DNA of 64,000 nt from Saccostrea cucullata. Its lineage: Eukaryota. Made by a program: the position numbers and the translations under genes. Positions 1,136 through 23,606 of this stretch are shown piece by piece. Within the stretch, counting starts at the first letter, position 1. Every line of letters starts with the position of its first letter. Below the pieces are notes generated by a model, which was not told the DNA's origin, did not search any database, and worked only from the letters and a program-made list of their open reading frames with translations. The stretch covers positions 62,001 through 126,000 of the forward strand of contig NW_026922866.1 of NCBI RefSeq assembly GCF_032062105.1, written 5' to 3'.

Positions 1136-2527
1136 GAAACTTGTACCGCGCCATAAAGCGCTTGCGGAGAAAAGGTAACGTCATATTTCACCTGTACTAT
1201 TACCTATTTCAAACGCAAAATCACGCATATACCGTTTCTCGCAATCATGCATTTTTCACGCACTTTCAAAAGTACTTTTAAGTGTATGTTGTGTCACAGA
1301 TCAGTAAGTTGTAAAGATATACAAGACGTTTTAGCTCTTAAATTGCTCGTTATCATCACATATTTCCCTCATACATGTATTTCGTATATTGATATCACTC
1401 ACATTTTAATTTGTCGTATTCGTCAAAACTTATGCATTTAAAACAAAGCCTGTTTTCAAATATTTGAATTCTCAAAAATAAATTTTCTTGGAAATGAAAG
1501 CAATAAGTCTCTCCTTTATTTTGCTGTAAAAAATTGAACAGTGAATTATAGATAAGTAATTGATTTCGATACTGGCCAATTCCAGACCTAGATCATTTAA
1601 CGTCACTTACGGTTTGGTAAATGACCTAACATTGTTTTATTTCTTCCAATGTGTGAGAAGTGCTGGCCAGGGCAGGACATCAAAATTCTGCTGGGGAATA
1701 AAGTTTCTGACAACACAGACAACATGCAGTCTGGTGTTTTCCAGTTACAGGTTATACGGAATTTGTTTGAACGGTATCGCATAACGTTGATTTATTTCAT
1801 CCTTTAGCGCGCAAATTCGTGTACCTTTTAGGTTTTTTTTTATTGTCAGTAAGCTGGTAAGGGAATTCTGTGACTATTGCTTGCTGAAATTCGACCCTTA
1901 GCCCATTGCGCTACCGCTTCCAAACTGTTGACGTTGCACTACAAGATCCGATTAATACTACCAATATTCGAGAAAAACACATCAGCGACTAGTGCTGATG
2001 ACCAATTAAATTTTTGATTAATCAGTGAACGAAACATGTCTTAAAATGTCTTGCCTTGTATTGAAATTGGTACCTTAGTTAACTCCGACATTACCTCGGA
2101 GCAGTATTGACCGTACATGTATCGCAGGACGTCTAGTTCTGATGTTAAATTCGCACAAAGCGATTATGTACAGTTCTTGTATTTATGCACTTGAAATGCT
2201 ACAGAGAGAGAGAGAGAGAGAGAGGAGATGGTCTGAAAGATTTTTATTTCCGCTAAGTATTGTATGTAGGGGCGATTAATATTTTCTGAACTTGATCTAT
2301 AAAATAATGTCATGTTATCAAGTTACATTATCTTTGTTGACTAAAGGTGCATCCTTACATTTACACATGTTTATGCATTTAGACAGTTTTTAACTTAGGT
2401 GACATTGTAGAATTACACGCCTTATAGAAACAATCATAATTTTGATGTTTTTGAAAAGAGTTCATATTTTAATATTTCAAATGACTGTGAATTAAACTCC
2501 TACCTTTTTAAAATAGTATAAATGTAC

Positions 2528-4276
2528 CTTTCTCAACAATGACCCCCGCAAGTCCACCCTGATGATAAAGTTCTTGGTTGGCAGCATTAACAATCACGTG
2601 GACACGAAGAGCAGTCAAATCACCAGATTTAACTTTTATACTAACACCAGCTTTAGTTATATATTCGGTCATATTTTTATTTGAGGTTTGGCCCCGTTTT
2701 ATACCCGATTCTGAAGAAGTACTCAAAAAATTTGACAAATCTGTCGATCCTTCATCGCCAATTTGAATGTAGCAGGTGTGATGTTTTTCAACTTCAGAAA
2801 TTTTTATTTTGCCGGTCGAACTTTTTAAATGTTTGGCAATTCCTGGTTTCTCAATTTTTTGTTTTTTCCATTGGATCCCATTTAAGATATCCTCTATTTT
2901 TTTCTTAGCTTGGTTCAGTCCCTTTTGGGTCCCTTTAATATCGATTTTATTATTATTTTTCTTTATTTGGACTTGCTGTTCTTTCAAACTTTCAGAAATC
3001 CGTTCAAATTTGCCTCCATGGTGTAGCTCCAAAAATTTAGAAAGACTTGGAGGAATTTCCATTGTATAACTCTTAATAGTATTGTCATGAAGAAAGTCTT
3101 CTATCAGTTCTCTTGCACGGCCCACGTATTCATTCATCGATACAATAATAACTTGTCTTTGTTCTGCTATTGTTATAATCTGGAGAAGGCCCTCGAAATC
3201 TTGTGTACATTCGATGCTTTTTGTTTGTTTCTCCCATTTATCTGTATTTAAAAGATAGACAGAGTCTGGGTTTACATCGATGGGGGACTCTGCAATGCTT
3301 TCCTTTACTGCATGTGCTGCTTCAACAGCTTTATCATCAGAGAAGGCATAACAAATCACCTCCTCTCTCTGTAAAACAAAACAGCTCATATTTCCCTTTT
3401 CTTTCAGTTCCTTTGAAATTCTGGCACTGACTTCCTCTCTGCTTAAAAAAACTTGTCTGTTTTTTGAAAACTTTCCCGCAGAAGCCTGACATATTTGTTG
3501 GCATTTTTCAAAGACTAATAATTTTGCGTGATTGACATCTGAACATTGTCCTTCAAATGTGATAGTTTTTTCCGGGATATCGAAAGTAACTTCTACATTT
3601 GGGAATTTTCTTTCTGTTGCTTCTTTGAAATTATCATCACGAAGTAACAGAAGCTGATAGTGCTTCAATTGCACCCTCTCCTTTACTTGTTGTTTCCTTC
3701 TCTCTAACTCACCTACTACTTTAGATATGATTAGCGTAACATTTTCTCTTAATTCAGCAACCTGATTTTCATAGCCCACGATAACAATAGTGTTATTGTT
3801 CTTTTCTATAACAATTCCTACTTTCTTGGGATCAGGAACATTCAATTTTTGAATTTCTTCTAAGGTTGTCTGCCACGCTTCCTGCAAGACATTCATGACC
3901 TCTACATGTAGATTTTCCAGCAATTTTTTAATGACATCAATCATGTGCTCCTTCCATGTTTTAGCCAATTTTCGACAATCTTTTGTATCTTTCCTTAAAG
4001 TACATTCTACTGTTAATTCTGTGGCTGCTTTGTTTGACCACTTTATTTTACCATATGCCAATTCTGCTTGCTCATTAAAAACCTCTTTATTTTCCTCAGA
4101 ACTGTGCACAAATTTCATCTTTCTTAATTCAAGGTTTCTCACTACCACTGGATCAACCGGCTTGAACTTTGGTCCCTCTTCAGGATTAAATGATTGTCCC
4201 AAGCATTCATGATATGTATGTACAGTCAATTCATTCTTATCAAGTTTATGACTTCTCTGGCAAACTCTGTCGCACA
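2528..4276 (-). CDS. PARP14: PARP14-like gene, large exon (KH-like region and start of macrodomain 1)
   Basis: ORF 2508-4277 trimmed to acceptor cctag| (4276) and donor |gtacat (2528). Ends with GDLT...VIVNAANQELYHQGGLAGVI (macrodomain N-terminus). Confidence 0.85.
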
Positions 4277-7200
4277 CTAGGAATGAAAAGAATGGATAAT
4301 CAATTCTTCATTTTTACAATGCAAGTGAACTCTTAAAACTAATATTTGAATTTTCTTCCTGTCGATTTGTTTTGGACCCTTGACACTTCCAAAATACAAA
4401 TTATATATTTTTTTTCAGCAAATATGTGCAAAATTGGCAAAAATATAATCACCAAAATCAACCCGACACAAGATAATTTTATTTTCTCTGTACATTAATT
4501 GCCCGAAATCATTCTTAGTTTTCAAAAACGAATATTTTTACTCAGCATTAACAAACCATCCTGCTGTATATACGAGTGGTTATCAAAAAGTTCGTGGGCT
4601 GAGGCTATAAAATTAGTACTTTGTAGTCTGTGCTTTCAAAATTTATATGGAAGATAAAACAACAGAAAATTAAGGAATGTTGAAAATTTTAGCCTGATAC
4701 GTTCATTATTTGCCAAATTATTCTAAATTGAAAACAACATTATATGATCACCCGGCGCTGTCGTCGTTTATTTTCATGACGTCCGATAACGTCATTGTTT
4801 TTTCATTGTCCGCTTCTTCTACCTCATACACTTTTTTAATGAGATTCCCTGAATAAAGACTTAAACCCGGATTGTTTATATGCTTTACAAAGTCATGAAC
4901 AGTACCTTAAGTGGCCTTAAATGAATATAATATTCCAAATAAATTAATACATTGGTAGAGATCTGCCGGCATATTTTGCTTTTGGGAGTTCAATATCTAC
5001 AACACATGATCAACGTCGTTTTTTGACGTGATTGATTTTTCACACCTTGACTGCAAATCGACATTAACTGTGTATCCCTCTTCTCTCTGAATCTATTTTG
5101 ACATTAAAAGACAAATACTCTGGATGAATATTATTTCTCTGTAGCCAGTTTTAAGATATTTTCGGTCTATACCAGTATTTTCTGTGGCAAAACTTCCTAG
5201 AATGTTGGAAACGGAAACCCCTTCCCCCTTTTGACGTCACTTTCAAGGCCTCAATTGTTTGGACATTCCGTGTAAAATCTACGATAAAATTTCGTACAAT
5301 TTCCAGAATGAAGTGAAAATTTCATATTTTATGGAACAATTCACCCCTACTAATGTGTTCGGAACCTTTTATTTTTCGGTGTTCTGCAAATAATAAGACC
5401 CGATGAGTTCAGAGTAGCTCTGGCAGTGGCTCTGGCGAGAGTTATCGAGACTTCAGTGAGATAGGGTAAATTATTCACGGAAATGTGGCCAGGAAGTGAC
5501 TAGCACGTGGAGACATGGTAAACAGAAAAGTTATGTTGCGTTTCAGTTTTTACCACCCTAGAATCAACTGATAATGTCTGTAGAAATGTACTTCAATCAA
5601 TCGATCTCTCTTACATTCATTCAAACTTAAATAAGTATTCTCTATAATGCAATTTTCTGCAGTCATGAATTAAAATTTCTTTTTGGGAAAATATTTTTGC
5701 ATGGGAACTGGGACTATATTTTTCGGCGTCAGATTAGCAAATGAGGCACCAGCATGATTTTAACTGACCAATCAGCTAAATGAGTATTGCATTATGGGTT
5801 ACTACGAATACTACAGGAAGTTTACGCTTGAAAAAAGGAAAATCTTATTGTAAATAAAAAAGCATTTTTTATGTTCATGCTCATAATGACAAACAATTCA
5901 TTTGTTCAATACACGGTGGAAGTCTAAGTTTCTGAAAGTCATACTGCAAAAGCGAATTGCGTCTGTATTAATTCCTTTGTTGTACTATCGGTGAATACAA
6001 TTGCCATGTGAATTCCCTGACCGAACACGTGATCATGAACGAAAACAAAGTTTTGTCCATTTGAATGCATAACAGATGCTGCTCGTTTTCCTTACCCTTG
6101 AAGCGCTGGGGCCCGTTTCACTAAAAGGCGTACGCCTGTCTTAACTCTACGACCGGCGTAAGTCCGGACTTACGTCTAACATTTGGACTAAGGTCCGTTT
6201 CACTAAAGGGCGTAACTTTGCGCCCGCCTTAAGTTAAGACAAAAATCTACGGCTGGTCTAAGGCAGGCGTAACTATAGACGTAAACATTGGATAATGGCG
6301 ACTTTCTGGCAGCTTCGCAGAAGAAGAAAGGAAACACCTCGGCGAGAACGCGTTTTTCGGGACCGAACCAACCCTCTCGAGTATCTTGATGATATAGATC
6401 TCGTAAGTAGGTATAGGTTCCCGGGAAGAGTCATTCGAAAACTGATAAATGATGTTGACCCTATTGTGAGGCGACCTACATACAAAAGTCATGCCATTCC
6501 CACCCACATTCAGGTACATGTATATGTGAATGCTTACTGTAGCATTGTATGCTTCTTAAATATCCACACATAAATAAATACTGACACATGGAATCACATG
6601 ATATGACAAATATAATGGGTTTTACAATGTACCTATTAATATAAATAAACTACATTTGCATACTTATTTATACATGTATATATAAAGATACACATAAACA
6701 TCTTACAGGTAATTATCACCTTAAGATATCTGTCAAAGGCAGACTTCTTTTCGGAAGTAGGCGACCTTCATGGCGTTTCCAGATCATCCGTATCCCGAGT
6801 AGTACATACAGGTTGTTATACTTCAATATTTTAACTTTAAAATGATGTCAATTCTATTTTTATTAAAAATTATTGCAGGCATGTAGCATCGTTGATGTGG
6901 AGATTTGACCCCTTGAATGTTTTAACATTTTGTCCCCTGCATTCACAAATGATAATAAAAGAAAAGTGAGCAAGTTAACACATCCCACACCCCTCCCCTC
7001 TTAATATTTGACAATATCATGCAAAATAAATGGCATGTTACACATTAAATACACACAAGTAATTCAAAATGAGGCATAATTCCAAAGTAATCGTTACATG
7101 TACTAAAACTCCGTGCAATTATTGAGTGTTTATTTTGTTCAGATAAAATGTACATAATAAAAAGTACCGGAATTCCCAGAAAAAAAGGAAGCGGAATTTC

Positions 7201-7978
7201 TTTGTAATATGCGCCTACACAATGTGTTCTCAATAACTGCAAAGTTTCACGAAATTAGTTTAAGCAGTTTCAGAAAAGTGACAATTGCAAGTACTATGGG
7301 GTATACTGATAATAATAATTATAATAGTAATATGTACATGTTTGCATACACTATCCTTCATGTTTCTACATGCCTGTAATACATTTAATCAGTTGTACAT
7401 TTCCTTTTCAAATATTCTTTATATATATCATTAAGGATTTTAACGCAGATTCATCATATTGTTATACAGTGTGCAGTGCAATAAATACAACAGTGGACAA
7501 CATTAAGTTTCCAGTTACTGCCAATGAATTACGCCATGTAAAATCTGAGTTCTATGACATTGCCAAATTTCCAAATTGCGTTGGTGCAGTCGATAGTACT
7601 CTATATCTAATACCAATTAAGGGCATGAGTGGTCCACAGGAGCCTGCTTTTGTATGCAGAAAAAACTTTCATGCCCTAAATATTCAGGCCGTAACAGATT
7701 CCAATATGAGGTATAAACGGTATTGATTAAAATATAAATACTAGCACATCATTTTTTTTGTAATAGAAATACCCTTGTATACGCCAAAACTTCAACAGGA
7801 GAAAATTAAAATATTTAATATAATGTCAAAAGGGTTTTATGAAATAGCAACCTTTGAAAATGTAAATGTTGTGAATTTTAAAATAACTTTATGGCACCAA
7901 ATATAACCAAACAAATATAACAAATATAAGAATGCTAATTGTTTGCTTACATATGCATAATTAAGGATAAAAAAAAAT

Positions 7979-8660
7979 TATATAAATATAGCCCTTTGAT
8001 GAGGTCAATCCATAGACATATCGACTTCACAGAAAAGCATATCGACCGAGCACGAAGTGCGAGGTCGATATGCTTTTCTGTGAAGTCGATATATCTATGG
8101 ATTGACCGAATTAAAGGGCTACATTTGTTATATTATTTTACATAGATTAACAAACAAATTATGAAAATAATTGGAAAAGTTTTCTCCCTTTAACAATTAG
8201 AGACTAGAGATCAAAATAAATTACACCGTTTAATGTAAATGCGTTTCCTTTATATTGATGGAGTGATTTAGACGATTTACTTATTCAGAATACTTCATTT
8301 ATTTGATTAAGTTTTGTATCAATATTTGACACACATATCGAATATGTTTTAATTAATATGAAGTAATCCTAATCCAATGCCTTCTTTTGTCTCATCAAAT
8401 ACAGAACATAGAAAAAAAGTTAGTAAAAGTTGAAATAAATATTTTTTTTTCTAGAAACGTCAAATCATACACTGTATTAGCTTTGATTGAATACAGTACT
8501 ATTTTGTTTCACGGAAATTATCTCCATTTTAAGAAACCTCAAGTCGATACGCATTTCAGATTCTATAAATAGTAACTCAAGTCTTTATGCTGTTATATAC
8601 TAAATCATGTGATCAAGTTTGAGCCAATCAGAGAGCCGGGAATAAATGATAAAAATAATA
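7979..8660. mobile_element. Non-coding hairpin (foldback) element in transposase intron 3
   Basis: ~70-bp-arm palindrome 7980-8130 centred on gcac-gaa-gtgc. The putative far end taaaaataata is complementary to the sequence just after the right arm. Confidence 0.6.
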
Positions 8661-9095
8661 TTATTTGATATTATTTCAGATTTCTTCAAATCAATACCTG
8701 TTTACCGGGGCAATTCACGACTCTTTCGTTTTGAGCAACTCGGGATTGTCAGATGTTATGGAACATCTCGAAGGGGGTGGGTGGTTACTTGGGGATTCTG
8801 GCTACCCTCTCAAGGAATGGCTCTTAACGCCATTCTTATCCCCAGCCAATCAACACGAAGTGAATTACAACGATGCCCATGGAAAGACTCGTGTTGTCAT
8901 AGAAAAATCGTTTGGGGTTTTGAAATCCACATTTAGGTAATTTAAACGCAATTTTTCGTTAAATATCTTTATATGTCATATTTGCAAGCAAATATTTTAT
9001 TTCAAACGTTCATTACGATAAACGCGACCTTACATTTTTTTATTTGAGAAAAAAATTATCTATTGCAACCATAAATAAACCTTTTTACAATTTTA

Positions 9096-9325
9096 TTGTG
9101 AATTCATTTAAAATTCTGAGGGCCAATTTTCTTAGATTGTGGGTTTTTTGGTTATTTGTGGAGATGTAATTTCGAGTATGGGTTTTCAGATTCAGTAACA
9201 AAGATATCTCTTTCTAAATTTCCTATGAAGATGTAAATTCGTGTGGTTTGGGGGGGGGGGGGGGGGGGGCTACCAACGAATATCACGAAAATTGAGCCAC
9301 CACGAATTCTAATGATTCCACAGTA
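9096..9325. mobile_element. Small TA-flanked MITE in transposase intron 4
   Basis: Degenerate ends tattgtgaattcattt / aatgattccacagta. Resembles the MITE at 49969-51472. Confidence 0.5.
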
Positions 9326-9628
9326 TTTACATTCAAGTAAATCTTTGCAGGTGTTTACATCGAACTGGAGGAGTACTCCCCTTTTCACCAAGTAGATGTT
9401 CTCAAATTATTCAATGCTGTATCCGGCTTAATAATTTAGCTGTTTCAGAGAAAGTCCCCTTACTTGAGGGTGGGGTTGTACAGAACATCAATGACAATGC
9501 CGTGTTTAACGCAAACGCACCAAGGAGAGCACAGGATGTGCGCATTCAAGTTGCAAATTTATTTTAACAATTCATCTATTCATTAAATCACACACTTACA
9601 TTGTAATAAAGAACATGACTACTATATC

Positions 9629-9855
9629 ATTTATGTAAACCCACTGACAATAGTTTAACTCTGTTTGATATGAAGAAACAAAATTAAGATTAAGTGAATT
9701 GAAAAATGCCATTTATTTACATTATAAATGACTGTATGAAAAAACACAAAATATCATGCATATAAACATATAATGCAGAACCAGAAAAATTGAACAATTG
9801 AAAATATAATCAATTTTGTTTCAATAGATATCAAAGGTGGGGTATAAAAATTCGC
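9629..9855. repeat. Split direct repeat B2 (227 bp; copy B1 at 10262-10488)
   Basis: Apparently identical direct repeat atttatgtaaaccc...aaattcgc. Confidence 0.95.
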
Positions 9856-10005
9856 AAACACCACAATCGTACATATTTTTAGCAAATTAAAACATAAACA
9901 TAAAAAACTATTCTAAAAGAATATGTATCATACAAAACCAATCAAAGATAACTATGCTGACACGGCAATAATTACAGATGGTGTTGGGGCGGGACGGAGG
10001 GCAAT

Positions 10006-10265
10006 TAAAATTACAGCAGAATTTTTGTTTGCGCGTTCACTGACAAGGTTCTGTGAGGGAATGGTGAAAGGCGTGAGAACCCGCGCGCATATCTTAGCAT
10101 CCGACGGCCGAGAATATAAATCATACCAATTTACAGAAAGATCTTCGAGAATTGCTTTAATCTAACGGATAAGAAATTTTGCGATTAAGAAACTTAATTG
10201 CTAGCATGGGTCTGCCGTGTCAGATGTTTTACATAAATTAATTTAAGGATGTAAATTAAATATTT
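10006..10265. repeat. Split direct repeat A2 (260 bp; copy A1 at 19892-20151)
   Basis: Apparently identical direct repeat taaaattacagcag...attaaatattt. Confidence 0.95.
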
Positions 10266-10787
10266 ATGTAAACCCACTGACAATAGTTTAACTCTGTTTG
10301 ATATGAAGAAACAAAATTAAGATTAAGTGAATTGAAAAATGCCATTTATTTACATTATAAATGACTGTATGAAAAAACACAAAATATCATGCATATAAAC
10401 ATATAATGCAGAACCAGAAAAATTGAACAATTGAAAATATAATCAATTTTGTTTCAATAGATATCAAAGGTGGGGTATAAAAATTCGCCACATTATTGTG
10501 TTTACATAAACGCAATAAACCCCATCCTTAAACTATTGTCTTCTAATGAAATGTTAATATTAATGCACAAACATAAATACCACACAGTTTCTTCAAAGAT
10601 GGTCAAGATACTCCTTTATAAGTGATAGAAGGATCTAGTTCAAGCTCCATTAACCAGCAGTGTCCATAATACGTTATAATTAAGTTCACGATCCTCTGTC
10701 ATATTTCATCAAAGTTTCTAACATCACTATTACAGCCAACCGGAATAAACAAACATATTATACATTATATAAACACAACCAGGCGAA

Positions 10788-11178
10788 TAAGTCAGAGGCC
10801 CATGTCCCCGTGACTTAATGTCGAAGAAAAATGAACGCAGTTGTACCTCCATTAGGTTAAGTCAGAGGCCCTTGTCCCCATGACTTACGTGTAAGTTCGA
10901 AAAATCAAAACAGTCCATCCTTTATTTGTAAGGTTAAGTCAGAGGCCCCTGTCCCCATGACTCAAGTTTGAAAATCAAAACATTCCATGCTATATTTATA
11001 AGGTTAAGTCAGAGGCCCATGTCCCCATGACCTAGGTTTAAAATTCAAAACAGTCCATGCTATAAAGGGAAATTAAATATAAATCTGGAAACTTATATTC
11101 GCTATGTCCAAAAACCAGCTGATCGTAGTATGTGTTGATATTTAGTGCATAATCAGAGGCCCCTGTCCCCATGATTAT
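10788..11178. repeat. Array of five 30-bp palindromic motifs downstream of YR
   Basis: taagtcagaggcccNtgtccccRtgactta at 10788, 10858, 10935 and 11005, with a variant ataatca..tgattat at ~11149. Confidence 0.9.
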
Positions 11179-11196
11179 ACTTACTGCAGAAAATAT

Positions 11197-12104
11197 TTAG
11201 ATTTTCAAAACAGGTATGCGTATGTATTTCTTGTATGCGTCGGAATGCCATCGTCCCATCTGTTTAATCTTTTCATCTGAAATACCCATTTCGGCCGCTG
11301 ACGTTGCCGCACCAATTCGAAAACTATGAGTTTTATAGAGTTTAGAATCGAGACCCGACCACTTTAAAGACATTTGTAGAAAGTTTGTAAATTGTTGCCT
11401 TTGGATTCCATGACCATCAGGGTAAGAAAAAGGGGACCCATGACTTGACCCCTTAGTGTAATAAATGACAATAGTGCTTGCACTGGACAGAGCCCTTCAT
11501 CGGAATTACTAGCCTGTAGAAACAAGGTGGGAATATGTCGGCCAGAACTGTGCTTGAAAGAATCAGGTCTTATTTCTAGGCCTTCTAGTGTGTTTGATTC
11601 GTCTCGAACAAGCTTAACATTTTCCAGTAGCAAAACATTACCTCTGTGATGTCGAGATGTGATAGTTATTTCCCCCACTCTTAAGAAGGCATGGAAGGCC
11701 AACAAATACATTGATTTTAGCATGCTGCGCTGGTAAAATGAGATACTTAAATGATCAATCGAGTCAACTAAATTTCTTAGAATAGACGGTGTTATAGGCA
11801 GCCTCGTATTCCCGGTACCTGGTTTTAACTTTTCATACCCTTGTAGCATTTTGCGAATTACAAAAAGCTGTGTTACGTCTTGATAGCCCTTTAATTTAAA
11901 TATATATCCTAGAGCTGATAGATAACTTTTCAAGGTCGACGTCGCCATGTTGGATTGAAAACAAAAGGCTACAAAAAGTGCGACATGTTGAGATGATGGT
12001 GGTAAGATGGGGACGTTTGGATATTGGTTGAACATGAAGGACTTATAACATGTAAAAGCTCTATCGTATGATGACCTAGAAGCTTTAGAAAGTGAACTCT
12101 GCAA
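11197..12104 (-). pseudogene. Tyrosine recombinase of the Ngaro element (1 frameshift near 11429)
   Basis: AFHAFLRVGEI, LCPVQAL; after the frameshift, HSFRIGAA...MGRWHSDAYKKYIR (R-H-R-W-Y catalytic set). Confidence 0.92.
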
Positions 12105-12124
12105 AATGAAGTCTGCTAGGTTCT

Positions 12125-22024: not shown

Positions 22025-22307
22025 GTTTGTTTGTTACGAAATTCACATTATTTAAGAAAACGCTATGGAAATCAACATGACAGATCAGAGAGAGAGAGAG
22101 AGAGAGAGAGGTTTCTTAAATTCTTTATTTCACTACAAAACACAGTTGCGAGTGTATTCCTTTCAACATAATTCAATCTACGATTTATTTTCAATCTAAA
22201 TATGTTTCAACGCTTTTAAGTTTTTATTATAGACCTCAAAACAAATATTGCAATAAATAATAAAGAAGAATATGCGATCTTTTCCATATATCTTTTCAAT
22301 GAACAAA

Positions 22308-22344
<37 letters not shown>

Positions 22345-23606
22345 ATGATATGTATGCGCATGTGCATAAGCTCGTTGTCAAGGACGTAAGTCTGGCCTTA
22401 ACTTAGTCCGATACTAGTGTTTATGACCAGGCGTACGCCTCTTAGTGAAACGCAACTTACGCCAGACTAAATTTTGGCGTACGCCCCCAGGCCTAACTTA
22501 AGTTTGGTCGTATATTACGCCATTTAGTGAAACGGGCTCCTGGTGTTCTGAACTGGACACAAACTACATATTATCAAACATTTTTCCCAGTAAACAATAA
22601 ATTAAAAACGCCCGTAACATCTTTAATAGTTTCTTATCTTTGTATTTGGTTCTTAAGAACATCTTTTTTTTAATCATTTTGTATTCCGTTGACATGAACA
22701 TAGTTGACCTGAACCACGTGTTCGAAGTAAAATGTAAACATGTATTTGGCGTAAACGTTGCTATTCATTCCAACGATTGGTCAGTTGCTCGTGGTAAGAT
22801 CCTCTGTGCGCTTTTATAACAATAGCCATATAAGGCAAACAAAGGTTTGTCAGTGTTAATGATAAAACACATTTTTTACCAGCGAATCGGTCACTAATGA
22901 GCTTTTTTTTCGCCGAAAAGTATAAGATATATTGTTATTTTAACACCCCCTCCTTTAGCTACCCCCTTTCTGTTGAAAATCATGAAAGTCTTTCAGAAAG
23001 GTTTGGAAACATTTATTACAGGACATGTTTTCAAAAGAAACAGGCTATATCCTGTTTACTGCCAATTTTATATATAGAACCGGTTCTACCCTATAACCTT
23101 TGAATAGATCAACCTAAACCACGTGCCTTGAATTTAAATCACAATAACATTAGTAGGGGTGCAATTGTGTCCTGACACATACCTGAATTAACAGAATTTT
23201 TGGATGTCAAATGATCAAATCAGAAGAGTTTTTCTCAGCTACACATAGGTCGCAAAAACGTCGTTTTCGAGGTTGTGCCGCCTGGACATACCATTGCTTA
23301 CAAAAACATTACTTATTTATTGAAAAATAAAATTTAAGATTTATGGTTTTATGATTTAGATAGAAAAGATGGTGCTGACTAGATATTTAAAATTTCATTG
23401 ATGTGCCTAAAGCTGTTTTAATTTTCTGACGCTAGTCCACGAACTTTTTGATAACCCCTCGTATTTATACCTATCTATGAATATATGTTTTGACTGCTTA
23501 ATCAAAAGCGTGACATTTCTCGGTTAGACTTCAAGTTTTTATATATCATGTTTAGCTATTTATCACATGTTATCGAATCAAAACACATTTTTACTATTTT
23601 TCTTAC

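What the first reader, a model, noticed from the sequence alone, without database searches (positions are those of the whole stretch)
4573..23461. Four-deep nest of four different transposon classes inside one PARP14-like intron
Seen: mariner-like (TA) > Harbinger (CTG) > Ngaro YR retrotransposon (ATTT crossover) > Kolobok (TTAA), each with both ends and target signature intact. Removing them leaves a ~0.44-kb intron. Decay follows nesting order: the outer element has no ORF, Harbinger and Ngaro are frameshifted, and Kolobok is intact. Inference: the intact outer TIRs could in principle move the inner elements as cargo, and the allele may be polymorphic.
Basis: partly seen in the sequence, partly recalled or inferred. 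Interest (0 to 1): 0.8.

Follow-up and report, generated by a model that had tools for sequence, protein, structure and literature searches.

The report
Five-deep transposon nest in oyster intron
Six transposable elements, stacked up to five deep, fill 18.9 kb of one intron of a PARP14-like oyster gene; the nest is real and deeper than reported, but it is an ordinary product of successive insertions, useful mainly as a relative clock for the six families.

Summary
The nest at 4573-23461 is real. The anatomy was incomplete.

- **Missed layer.** Harbinger does not sit in the mariner-like element. It sits in a 1.39-kb non-coding TIR element ("X", 5342-23161) with a 5-bp duplication, CAATT.
- **Missed side insertion.** A 0.69-kb Helitron-like repeat (about 7977-8664) lies in an intron of the Harbinger transposase gene.
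- **Corrected order.** Mariner-like MITE (TA) > X (CAATT) > Harbinger (CTG) > Ngaro (ATTT) > Kolobok (TTAA). That is five deep, with six elements.

Every reconstructed empty site aligns without gaps to uninterrupted sibling copies elsewhere in the genome. Removing the nest leaves a 439-bp phase-1 intron that splits one PARP14-type RRM domain.

Identity to siblings rises inward, from 87-93% to 98-99%. ORF decay does not simply follow nesting. The two outer families are non-coding in every copy examined. Harbinger has private single-base indels. Ngaro has private indels plus one shared with a sibling. Kolobok is intact.

I found no second locus carrying any inner junction and no alternate haplotig. 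Public read sets did not cover the unique flank. Cargo mobilisation and polymorphism therefore remain untested. The genome is most likely Saccostrea cucullata.

The parts
2508..4276 (-). Host exon downstream of the intron. It encodes the second half of an RRM, then the PARP14-type KH domains.
   Evidence: Pfam hits: RRM_PARP14_3 profile 55-80 at residues 3-28, plus KH_PARP14_1/2/3. The acceptor AG is read at 4277-4278 on the minus strand.
23607..23877 (-). Host exon upstream of the intron, encoding the first half of the same RRM.
   Evidence: RRM_PARP14_3 profile 2-53, E=2.4e-11. The donor GTAAGAA is read at 23606 downward. The exon is 271 nt, so the intron is phase 1, and the downstream frame fits.
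4573..23461 (.). Layer 1: mariner-like non-autonomous element. Own sequence is 4573-5341 plus 23167-23461 (1064 bp). TA duplication at 4571-4572 and 23462-23463.
   Evidence: TIR pair. More than 1500 genome candidates at 87-93% identity. The reconstruction aligns end to end with 4 siblings. TA is on both sides in 5/5 copies. The TIR matches mariners in the same genome that carry Transposase_1 at 19-20 of its first 20 positions (20-21 of 25 overall).
5342..23161 (.). Own sequence is 5342-6108 plus 22543-23161 (1386 bp). 5-bp duplication CAATT at 5337-5341 and 23162-23166.
   Evidence: Thousands of candidates at 89-94% identity. The reconstruction aligns end to end. A perfect 5-bp TSD is seen in 5/5 copies, and the TIR is CACCCCTACTAATGT. 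No ORF over 89 aa.
6109..22539 (+). Layer 3: PIF/Harbinger element, about 5.2 kb of own sequence. CTG duplication at 6106-6108 and 22540-22542. The multi-exon transposase gene is on + (about 6290-9567). The Myb-like gene is on - (about 22018-21372).
   Evidence: DDE_Tnp_4 E=3.9e-16, HTH_Tnp_4, and Myb_DNA-bind_5 in two exon pieces. Siblings are 92-97% identical. CWG TSD is present in the copies checked. Private changes against 6/6 siblings: a 1-nt deletion at 8700-8703 and two single-nt indels in the Myb exon.
7977..8664 (.). Its ends are uncertain by 1-4 nt.
   Evidence: It is absent from 6 sibling Harbingers. More than 20 copies are 94-99% identical. There is no TIR and no TSD in 23 copies. 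A hairpin with 83-nt arms at 7971-8139 sits next to one end.
9629..20151 (-). Layer 4: Ngaro-type tyrosine-recombinase retrotransposon, 6683 bp of own sequence. A1 is 20151-19892, B1 is 10488-10262, A2 is 10265-10006 and B2 is 9855-9629. ATTT is at both ends.
   Evidence: A and B repeats are 100% identical within the copy. RT/RNase H and the SGNH ORF are detected. Siblings are 98.3-99.5% identical. A sibling ORF gives a weak Phage_integrase hit, and its homologues carry PF00589/PF02899. AAAT in element sense flanks most copies. Private indels are listed.
14748..18583 (+). Layer 5: Kolobok element, 3836 bp. TTAA duplication at 14744-14747 and 18584-18587. Transposase ORF at 16545-18191 (+, 548 aa). 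Second ORF at 15946-15377 (-, 189 aa).
   Evidence: At least 30 copies, mostly 98-100% identical. TTAA is on both sides, the TIR is identical and both ORFs are open in 5/5 copies. The termini are 5'-AG...CT-3'. Invariant residues are D248, D314 and E462, DxxH at 334-337, and zinc-finger residues H400, H405, C408 and C414.

Best explanation
A small (about 0.44 kb) phase-1 intron of a PARP14-like gene was hit by a chain of independent insertions. Each insertion landed inside the previous element.

1. A 1.06-kb mariner-type MITE inserted at TA.
2. The 1.39-kb non-coding TIR element X made a 5-bp duplication (CAATT) inside the MITE.
3. A 5.2-kb PIF/Harbinger element made a CTG duplication inside X.
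4. Two events followed in unknown order. A 0.69-kb Helitron-like repeat entered an intron of the Harbinger transposase gene. An Ngaro retrotransposon integrated by tyrosine-recombinase crossover at ATTT, in the spacer between Harbinger's two convergent genes.
5. A 3.8-kb Kolobok element made a TTAA duplication about 33 nt upstream of the first ATG of Ngaro's gag-like ORF.

Shown: the order of events (from topology), the ends, the target signatures, and the family identity of four of the six elements. Inferred: that each step happened at this locus, that the two youngest families are still active, and the classification of X and of the 0.69-kb repeat.
For: - **Empty sites.** Four reconstructed empty sites align gaplessly to uninterrupted siblings: X site 4/4, Harbinger site 4/4, Ngaro site 6/6, Kolobok site 4/4. 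Reconstructed outer and X elements align end to end as single HSPs. Harbinger with Ngaro removed aligns straight across the site.
- **Target signatures recur in independent copies.** TA 5/5 and a 5-bp TSD 5/5. CWG in the Harbinger copies. AAAT flanks most Ngaro copies and equals the B1/A2 junction. TTAA 5/5.
- **Protein evidence.** DDE_Tnp_4 plus Myb_DNA-bind_5 for Harbinger. RVT_1, RNase H, SGNH and integrase for Ngaro. Kolobok-type DDE, DxxH and zinc finger, against the published criteria.
- **Age.** Identity to siblings rises inward: 87-93%, 89-94%, 92-97%, then about 98-99%.
- **Host intron.** The RRM profile is split at positions 53/55 between the two flanking exons. A paralogue has a roughly 0.63-kb intron at the same place.
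Against: - No read-level confirmation of this locus. The public runs are low-coverage contig sets that reproduce the repeat families but leave 3900-4490 essentially uncovered.
- Interiors of 99%-identical repeats could be swapped between copies during assembly without being noticed.
- X and the 0.69-kb repeat have no protein, so their superfamilies are not established.
- Cut-and-paste movement leaves no donor copy. In-place assembly of the whole nest therefore cannot be strictly proven from one haplotype.
Confidence: 0.9

Rival explanations
1. The composite was assembled at another site and then moved here as one 18.9-kb unit. A mariner transposase acting on the outer TIRs would have carried the inner elements as cargo.
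For: Both outer TIRs are present with TA flanks. The genome holds Transposase_1-bearing mariners with closely related TIRs; the one full-length-sized open frame seen in those loci (454 aa, L042) lies on the strand opposite the Transposase_1 match, so it does not show an intact transposase. Cut-and-paste would leave no second copy.
Against: - The outer family is old (87-93% identity), while the innermost layers are about 99% identical to their siblings. A unit move would have to be very recent and use an aged MITE.
- The left TIR differs from the family form at position 5.
- The related autonomous TIRs differ at 4-5 of 25 positions.
- No other locus carries any inner junction.
- From general knowledge of Tc1/mariner elements, not tested here: transposition efficiency falls steeply with length.
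Confidence: 0.03
2. The nest is an assembly artefact: repeats from different loci were chained together.
For: The assembly is fragmented, with 23,869 contigs. All the elements are multi-copy. The unique flank was not covered by the runs examined.
Against: Five layers are perfectly symmetrical. The two halves of every interrupted element resume at the exact base, with the class-specific duplication on both sides. Random mis-joins in repeats would not produce this. The flanking exons complete one RRM domain in frame.
Confidence: 0.03
3. One reading: Harbinger is inserted directly into one 2.45-kb mariner-like element.
For: Only the outer TIR pair is conspicuous by eye.
Against: Window 5342-6108 plus 22543-23161 is a separate family with thousands of copies. 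Those copies end exactly at these bases with their own TIR and 5-bp TSDs. Uninterrupted copies of the outer family have a single CAATT at that point.
Confidence: 0.01

Closest known systems
Nested transposon clusters, such as the layered retrotransposon nests of maize intergenic regions and nested TEs in Drosophila heterochromatin (recalled from general knowledge, not checked here)
   Same: Younger elements lie inside older ones, each with its own target duplication. Topology gives the order of events.
   Different: Here the layers come from five or six different superfamilies, mostly DNA transposons. The nest sits in an intron of a coding gene in a bivalve.
Kolobok superfamily (Kapitonov and Jurka; criteria as given in PMC9587614 and PMC6004289)
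   Same: [quoted passage not shown]
   Different: No THAP domain was detected. There are no long terminal direct repeats or His-Me nuclease, so it is not KolobokP. The second ORF lies upstream and divergent from the transposase. Its proposed KolX / P2X7-ballast relationship was not confirmed here.
Ngaro group of tyrosine-recombinase retrotransposons (Goodwin and Poulter 2004, as summarised in PMC9210276)
   Same: Split direct repeats in the order A1 ... B1 A2 B2. RT/RNase H and YR ORFs, no methyltransferase domain, and an SGNH hydrolase ORF.
   Different: The SGNH ORF is first, upstream of the gag-like ORF, not after the YR as in amphibian Ngaro. A spacer of about 146-150 nt separates A2 from B2 in all copies.
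PIF/Harbinger superfamily
   Same: 3-bp target duplication, a DDE_Tnp_4 transposase, a separate Myb/SANT-like gene, and short TIRs.
   Different: The target is CWG rather than the more usual TWA. I recall CWG-targeting animal Harbingers, but that was not checked here.
Mariner-derived MITEs
   Same: TA duplication. The roughly 25-bp TIR is nearly identical over its first 20 bases to mariners in the same genome that carry Transposase_1. High copy number and no ORF.
   Different: At 1.06 kb it is long for a MITE. No internal similarity to the autonomous copies was detected.
Transib superfamily (PMC1131882)
   Same: Element X makes precise 5-bp duplications, and its ends start with CAC.
   Different: The heptamer is CACCCCT, not CACAATG. 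No nonamer is recognisable. Its targets are AT-rich, not GC-rich. No transposase is present.

Membership tests
Tc1/mariner (outer element) | TA target-site duplication | tested here: met
   TA is on both sides in the window copy and in 4/4 siblings.
Tc1/mariner (outer element) | TIRs related to those of elements that encode a mariner transposase | tested here: met
   19-20 of the first 20 TIR bases (20-21 of 25) match TA-flanked copies that carry PF01359 in the same genome.
Tc1/mariner (outer element) | DD34D/E transposase ORF | tested here: not met
   No ORF over 56 aa. The family is uniformly about 1.06 kb, so it is non-autonomous.
Transib (element X) | 5-bp target-site duplication | tested here: met
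   5/5 copies have perfect 5-bp duplications.
Transib (element X) | TIR with CACAATG-like heptamer, spacer and A-rich nonamer; GC-rich targets | tested here: not met
   Only the CAC is shared and no nonamer is seen. The targets are CAATT, ATATA, TGATT, AAACA and TTAGT.
PIF/Harbinger | DDE_Tnp_4 transposase plus a Myb/SANT-like second gene | tested here: met
   PF13359 E=3.9e-16. PF13873 matched in two exon pieces on the opposite strand.
PIF/Harbinger | 3-bp target-site duplication and TIRs | tested here: met
   CTG/CTG in the window. CTG or CAG in siblings that have both ends.
Ngaro (YR retrotransposon) | Split direct repeats A1 ... B1 A2 B2 | tested here: met
   A 260/260 and B 227/227 identical, in the required order. 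The same structure is seen in 4 siblings.
Ngaro (YR retrotransposon) | RT/RNase H plus tyrosine recombinase; no methyltransferase, protease or integrase | tested here: met
   RVT_1 and RT_RNaseH are detected. The YR signal is weak in Pfam and PHROGs (E about 7e-4), but homologues carry PF00589/PF02899. No methyltransferase, protease or rve hit.
Kolobok | TTAA duplication with 5'-RR ... YY-3' termini | tested here: met
   TTAA|AGGCC...GGCCT|TTAA in 5/5 copies.
Kolobok | [quoted passage not shown] | tested here: met
   D248, D314, H337 and E462 are invariant, D334 is conserved in at least 90% of the 12 sequences, and H400, H405, C408 and C414 are invariant, across relatives down to 38% identity.
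Kolobok | THAP DNA-binding domain (usual, not universal) | tested here: not met
   No Pfam THAP hit, even at E<=10.
Kolobok Kol0 lineage | KolX accessory protein with P2X7-ballast similarity | tested here: inconclusive
   The 189-aa ORF has a conserved Cys cluster. It has no Pfam or PDB sequence match, singly or as a profile. Fold searches found no P2X7 chain, but the model was mediocre (pLDDT 66).
Helitron (0.69-kb repeat) | No TIR, no TSD, hairpin close to one end | tested here: met
   23 copies lack matching flanks. The 83-nt-arm hairpin ends about 12 nt from one terminus.
Helitron (0.69-kb repeat) | 5'-TC ... CTRR-3' termini and insertion between A and T | tested here: not met
   The termini are AT-rich (TATTATATAAAT... 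/ ...AAAATAATAT) in either orientation. The target dinucleotide is ambiguous, A|T or T|T.

The most novel reading that the evidence does not exclude
The nest is a segregating structural allele of an innate-immunity-type PARP14-like gene. Either it, or a sub-nest bounded by one of the intact TIR pairs, can still be mobilised as a unit by a resident transposase. An old MITE would then act as a vehicle for retrotransposon and DNA-transposon cargo.
Probability: 0.04. Interest if true: 0.55.

Novelty: new member of a known kind. Interest (0 to 1): 0.25.

Why it matters
Nested insertions are a well-known outcome of transposon activity, so this adds no new principle. It has three practical uses.

- **Relative clock.** One locus fixes the order of activity of six families from at least five superfamilies in an oyster genome: mariner-MITE, then X, then Harbinger, then Ngaro and the Helitron-like repeat, then Kolobok. 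The two youngest look recently active. Ngaro's split repeats are identical. All five Kolobok copies examined keep identical TIRs and both ORFs open.
- **Clean boundaries.** It supplies exact ends, target sites and paralogous empty sites for curating these families, including an Ngaro with a readable 4-bp crossover core.
- **Effect on the host gene.** An intron of a tandemly repeated PARP14-like gene grew about 44-fold, from 0.44 to 19.3 kb. This could be tested for effects on splicing, and for presence or absence in populations.

Tried and rejected
- **Reads.** One run search and one lay. The four runs are low-coverage contig sets. They reproduce uninterrupted family members, for example loose ends at 5341, 6109 and 9632 and the joint 7960>8665. 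They leave the unique flank 3900-4490 essentially uncovered. There is no verdict on locus junctions or polymorphism.
- **Alternate haplotig.** A search with exon plus left intron flank found only paralogues at 72-78% identity.
- **Composite at other loci.** No hit other than self spans any junction. Only the best candidates are scored, so this is a lower bound.
- **The 189-aa Kolobok ORF as KolX / P2X7 ballast.** Pfam at E<=10, phmmer and a profile search against PDB, an AlphaFold2 model (pLDDT 66), Foldseek and VIA-align wide all failed to find P2X7. Not confirmed, not excluded.
- **Pfam on the 548-aa transposase.** No direct hit. Homologues match PF20700 'Mutator-like transposase'. I rejected a MULE assignment because of the TTAA duplication, the RR/YY ends and the Kolobok zinc finger.
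- **KolobokP.** Rejected: no long terminal direct repeats and no His-Me nuclease.
- **Coding remnants in the outer element and X.** None seen, and no similarity to the mariner loci.
- **'Harbinger is merely intron-split, not frameshifted'.** Considered, then rejected, after finding a window-private 1-nt deletion against 6/6 siblings.
- I made no joined (spliced) translation of host or Harbinger exons. Exons were searched one by one, and frame continuity was judged from exon lengths only.

Full report
**Host gene and intron**

The window's minus strand carries a PARP14-like gene.
- The ORF at 2508-4277 has PARP14 KH domains. Its first residues match the second half of the RRM_PARP14_3 profile, positions 55-80.
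- The exon at 23607-23877 matches positions 2-53 of the same profile, with E=2.4e-11.
- Further upstream exons repeat the same half-RRM pattern, and a Macro domain lies at 1-369.
- The donor (GTAAGAA) and the acceptor (…CCTAG) are readable at 23606 and 4277.
- The upstream exon is 271 nt long, which gives a phase-1 intron that fits the downstream frame.

So 4277-23606 is one intron of 19,330 bp. A paralogue has an intron of about 633 bp at the same position. I did not make a joined translation. Exons were searched singly.

**Layer 1: mariner-like MITE (4573-23461)**

The TIR pair at 4573-4615 / 23419-23461 is flanked by TA. Its own sequence is only 4573-5341 plus 23167-23461, which is 1064 bp. 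The genome gives more than 1500 first-look candidates at 87-93% identity. The reconstruction aligns end to end with four siblings, and all of them are flanked by TA. The window copy has no ORF over 56 aa.

The genome holds at least 124 Transposase_1 (mariner) matches. Several of those copies, about 1.2-1.9 kb long (L045, L034, L040), have TIRs that match the MITE's at 19-20 of the first 20 bases; L045 and L040 are TA-flanked on both sides, L034 on one side only. 'Mariner-like' is therefore justified. The missing ORF is a property of the family, not decay at this locus.

Searches with the stretches between the outer TIRs and Harbinger returned thousands of candidates. These stop exactly at 5342 and 23161. 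The ends form a 15-nt TIR, CACCCCTACTAATGT, flanked by CAATT on both sides. Four siblings each have a different, perfect 5-bp duplication. The reconstructed 1386-bp element aligns end to end at 92.6-93.0% identity. Uninterrupted copies of the outer family have a single CAATT at that point.

X has no coding capacity. A 5-bp duplication and a CAC start recall Transib. The heptamer/nonamer structure and GC-rich targets described for Transib are absent, so I leave X unclassified.

**Layer 3: Harbinger (6109-22539)**

The TIR is GGGCCCGTTTCAC…, with CTG on both sides. Siblings show CTG or CAG. Uninterrupted X copies have a single CTG at the site.

Exon-sized pieces on the + strand carry HTH_Tnp_4 and DDE_Tnp_4 (E=3.9e-16). 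Two pieces on the - strand carry Myb_DNA-bind_5. All six siblings show equally fragmented ORFs. Contigs of one run (X24, type not recorded) join 6805>7464 and 7708>8678 with GT..AG ends. The gene is therefore multi-exon.

The window copy is nevertheless damaged. Against 6/6 siblings it has:
- a private 1-nt deletion in a T run at 8700-8703, in the exon just upstream of the DDE core;
- an in-frame 6-nt insertion at about 7600;
- two single-nt indels in the first Myb exon (the first is also seen, table 4).

Sibling Harbingers run straight from window 7976 to 8665. The inserted piece belongs to a family with many copies at 94-99% identity. It lies inside the transposase intron defined above.

In 23 copies I found no TIR and no target duplication. 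A hairpin with 83-nt arms at 7971-8139 ends about 12 nt from one terminus. This is Helitron-like. The canonical TC…CTRR ends are absent, and the A|T versus T|T target is ambiguous, so the label is tentative.

**Layer 4: Ngaro (9629-20151, sense on the minus strand)**

- **Repeats.** In element sense the repeats are A1 20151-19892, B1 10488-10262, A2 10265-10006 and B2 9855-9629. The A and B pairs are each 100% identical. This is the A1…B1A2B2 order that defines Ngaro.
- **Crossover.** ATTT (AAAT in element sense) is at both ends and at the B1/A2 junction. It also flanks most sibling copies. Six uninterrupted Harbingers have a single ATTT at the site. This fits a tyrosine-recombinase crossover between a circular junction and the target, with no net duplication.
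- **Position in Harbinger.** The site lies about 60 nt after the transposase stop codon, in the spacer between Harbinger's convergent genes.
- **Domains.** An SGNH hydrolase ORF comes first, then a gag-like ORF and RT/RNase H. The last ORF gives weak integrase hits in Pfam and PHROGs. Its homologues carry PF00589/PF02899.
- **Damage.** Against four siblings (98.3-99.5% identity) the window copy has private deletions of about 123 nt just inside A1, 14 nt in the SGNH ORF and 13 nt in the gag-like ORF. It also has a private 1-nt insertion in the pol region, and a 1-nt deletion in the YR ORF that it shares with one sibling.
- **Timing of the damage.** It has 21 private substitutions. If all had arisen in place, about 3 differences between the repeat pairs would be expected, and none is seen (P about 0.045). 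Part of the damage probably came with the inserted copy.

**Layer 5: Kolobok (14748-18583)**

The junctions read TTAA|AGGCCGGGG…CCCCGGCCT|TTAA. Four uninterrupted Ngaro copies have one TTAA at the site. The site is about 33 nt upstream of the first ATG of the gag-like ORF. Five copies at different loci all have TTAA on both sides, identical TIRs and both ORFs open, at 548 aa and 187-189 aa.

The transposase has 268 relatives, mostly bivalve, many carrying PF20700. An alignment down to 38% identity keeps these residues invariant: D248, D314 and E462; H337 of the DxxH motif (D334 is conserved in at least 90% of the sequences); and H400, H405, C408 and C414. This is the layout published for Kolobok, as are the TTAA target and the RR/YY termini. 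It is not KolobokP, because it has no long terminal direct repeats and no His-Me nuclease. The proposed KolX / P2X7-ballast nature of the 189-aa ORF was not confirmed by sequence, profile or fold searches.

**Age order**

Identity of the window copy to its siblings:

| Element | Identity to siblings |
|---|---|
| Outer MITE | 87-93% |
| X | 89-94% |
| Harbinger | 92-97% |
| 0.69-kb repeat | 94-99% |
| Ngaro | about 98-99.5% |
| Kolobok | mostly 98-100% |

 This agrees with the order that topology requires.

All inner insertions lie in non-coding parts of their hosts. By a rough estimate this would happen by chance about one time in ten, so I draw nothing from it.

- **Cargo movement.** No hit other than the locus itself spans the outer|X, X|Harbinger, Harbinger|Ngaro or Ngaro|Kolobok junctions. 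Cut-and-paste leaves no donor copy, so this does not exclude a unit move. Three things make it unlikely: the age of the MITE family, the 18.9-kb size, and a mismatch in the left TIR.
- **Polymorphism.** There is no alternate haplotig. The runs available (0.4-0.9 Gb each, kept as contigs) show only family-level sequence and do not cover the unique flank. Untested.
- **Misassembly.** The exact symmetry of five layers argues strongly against it.

**Organism**

A sibling YR ORF is 100% identical to an NCBI protein of Saccostrea cucullata. That protein sits on a contig of 80,616 bp, the same length as the contig holding the sibling. Runs labelled 'oyster metagenome' share part of the stretch.

**Verdict**

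This is a real, well-preserved nest, five deep, with six elements. It is a new instance of a known phenomenon. It is useful for TE curation and relative dating, but it is not surprising to a specialist.

Noticed in passing
L013 (G000:C19509:25296-32346) ORF 4350-5369: This sibling YR ORF is 100% identical to an NCBI protein of Saccostrea cucullata on a contig of the same length (80,616 bp). The window's genome is therefore most likely that oyster.
   Followed up: partly
window 19283-19792 (-) and siblings: The SGNH/GDSL hydrolase ORF is the first ORF of this Ngaro family, upstream of the gag-like ORF. In amphibian Ngaro it follows the YR ORF (PMC9210276).
   Followed up: partly
window 9856-10005 and siblings (L013 6568-6713): A unique spacer of about 146-150 nt separates A2 from B2 in every Ngaro copy examined. 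B2 therefore does not abut A2 as in the textbook scheme.
   Followed up: partly
window 10788-11186: A tandem array with a period of about 70 nt, whose units contain a palindrome of about 30 nt, lies in the Ngaro 3' non-coding region. The same array appears in sibling L013.
   Followed up: no
window 15377-15946 (-): The 189-aa second ORF of the Kolobok family is conserved in Mytilus, Pinctada and oysters, with invariant C82, C85, C87, H129, H158 and C166. I found no Pfam, PDB or fold match, and P2X7-ballast similarity was not reproduced.
   Followed up: yes
window 6805>7464 and 7708>8678 (run X24): Contigs of one small run of unrecorded type skip these stretches with GT..AG ends. This suggests that Harbinger-family transcripts are made and spliced.
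   Followed up: partly
L013 / L016 and L026 / L027: Two Ngaro copies on different contigs share the same 5' flank, so they are haplotigs or a segmental duplication. Two Harbinger copies 14.6 kb apart on contig C21301 share the same right flank, which suggests a local duplication.
   Followed up: no
G000:C5003:154299-154889, C23640:91095-91682, C22168:2710-3223: These are paralogues of the PARP14-like exon at 72-78% DNA identity. One lies on the same contig about 88 kb away, which suggests a tandem gene family.
   Followed up: partly
window about 29972-30417: A run of N (563 in the window) lies inside the upstream part of the gene region.
   Followed up: no
window 22087-22110 and 22313-22342: (GA)n and (CT)n microsatellites in inverted orientation lie near the Harbinger right end. 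They are also present in sibling copies.
   Followed up: no
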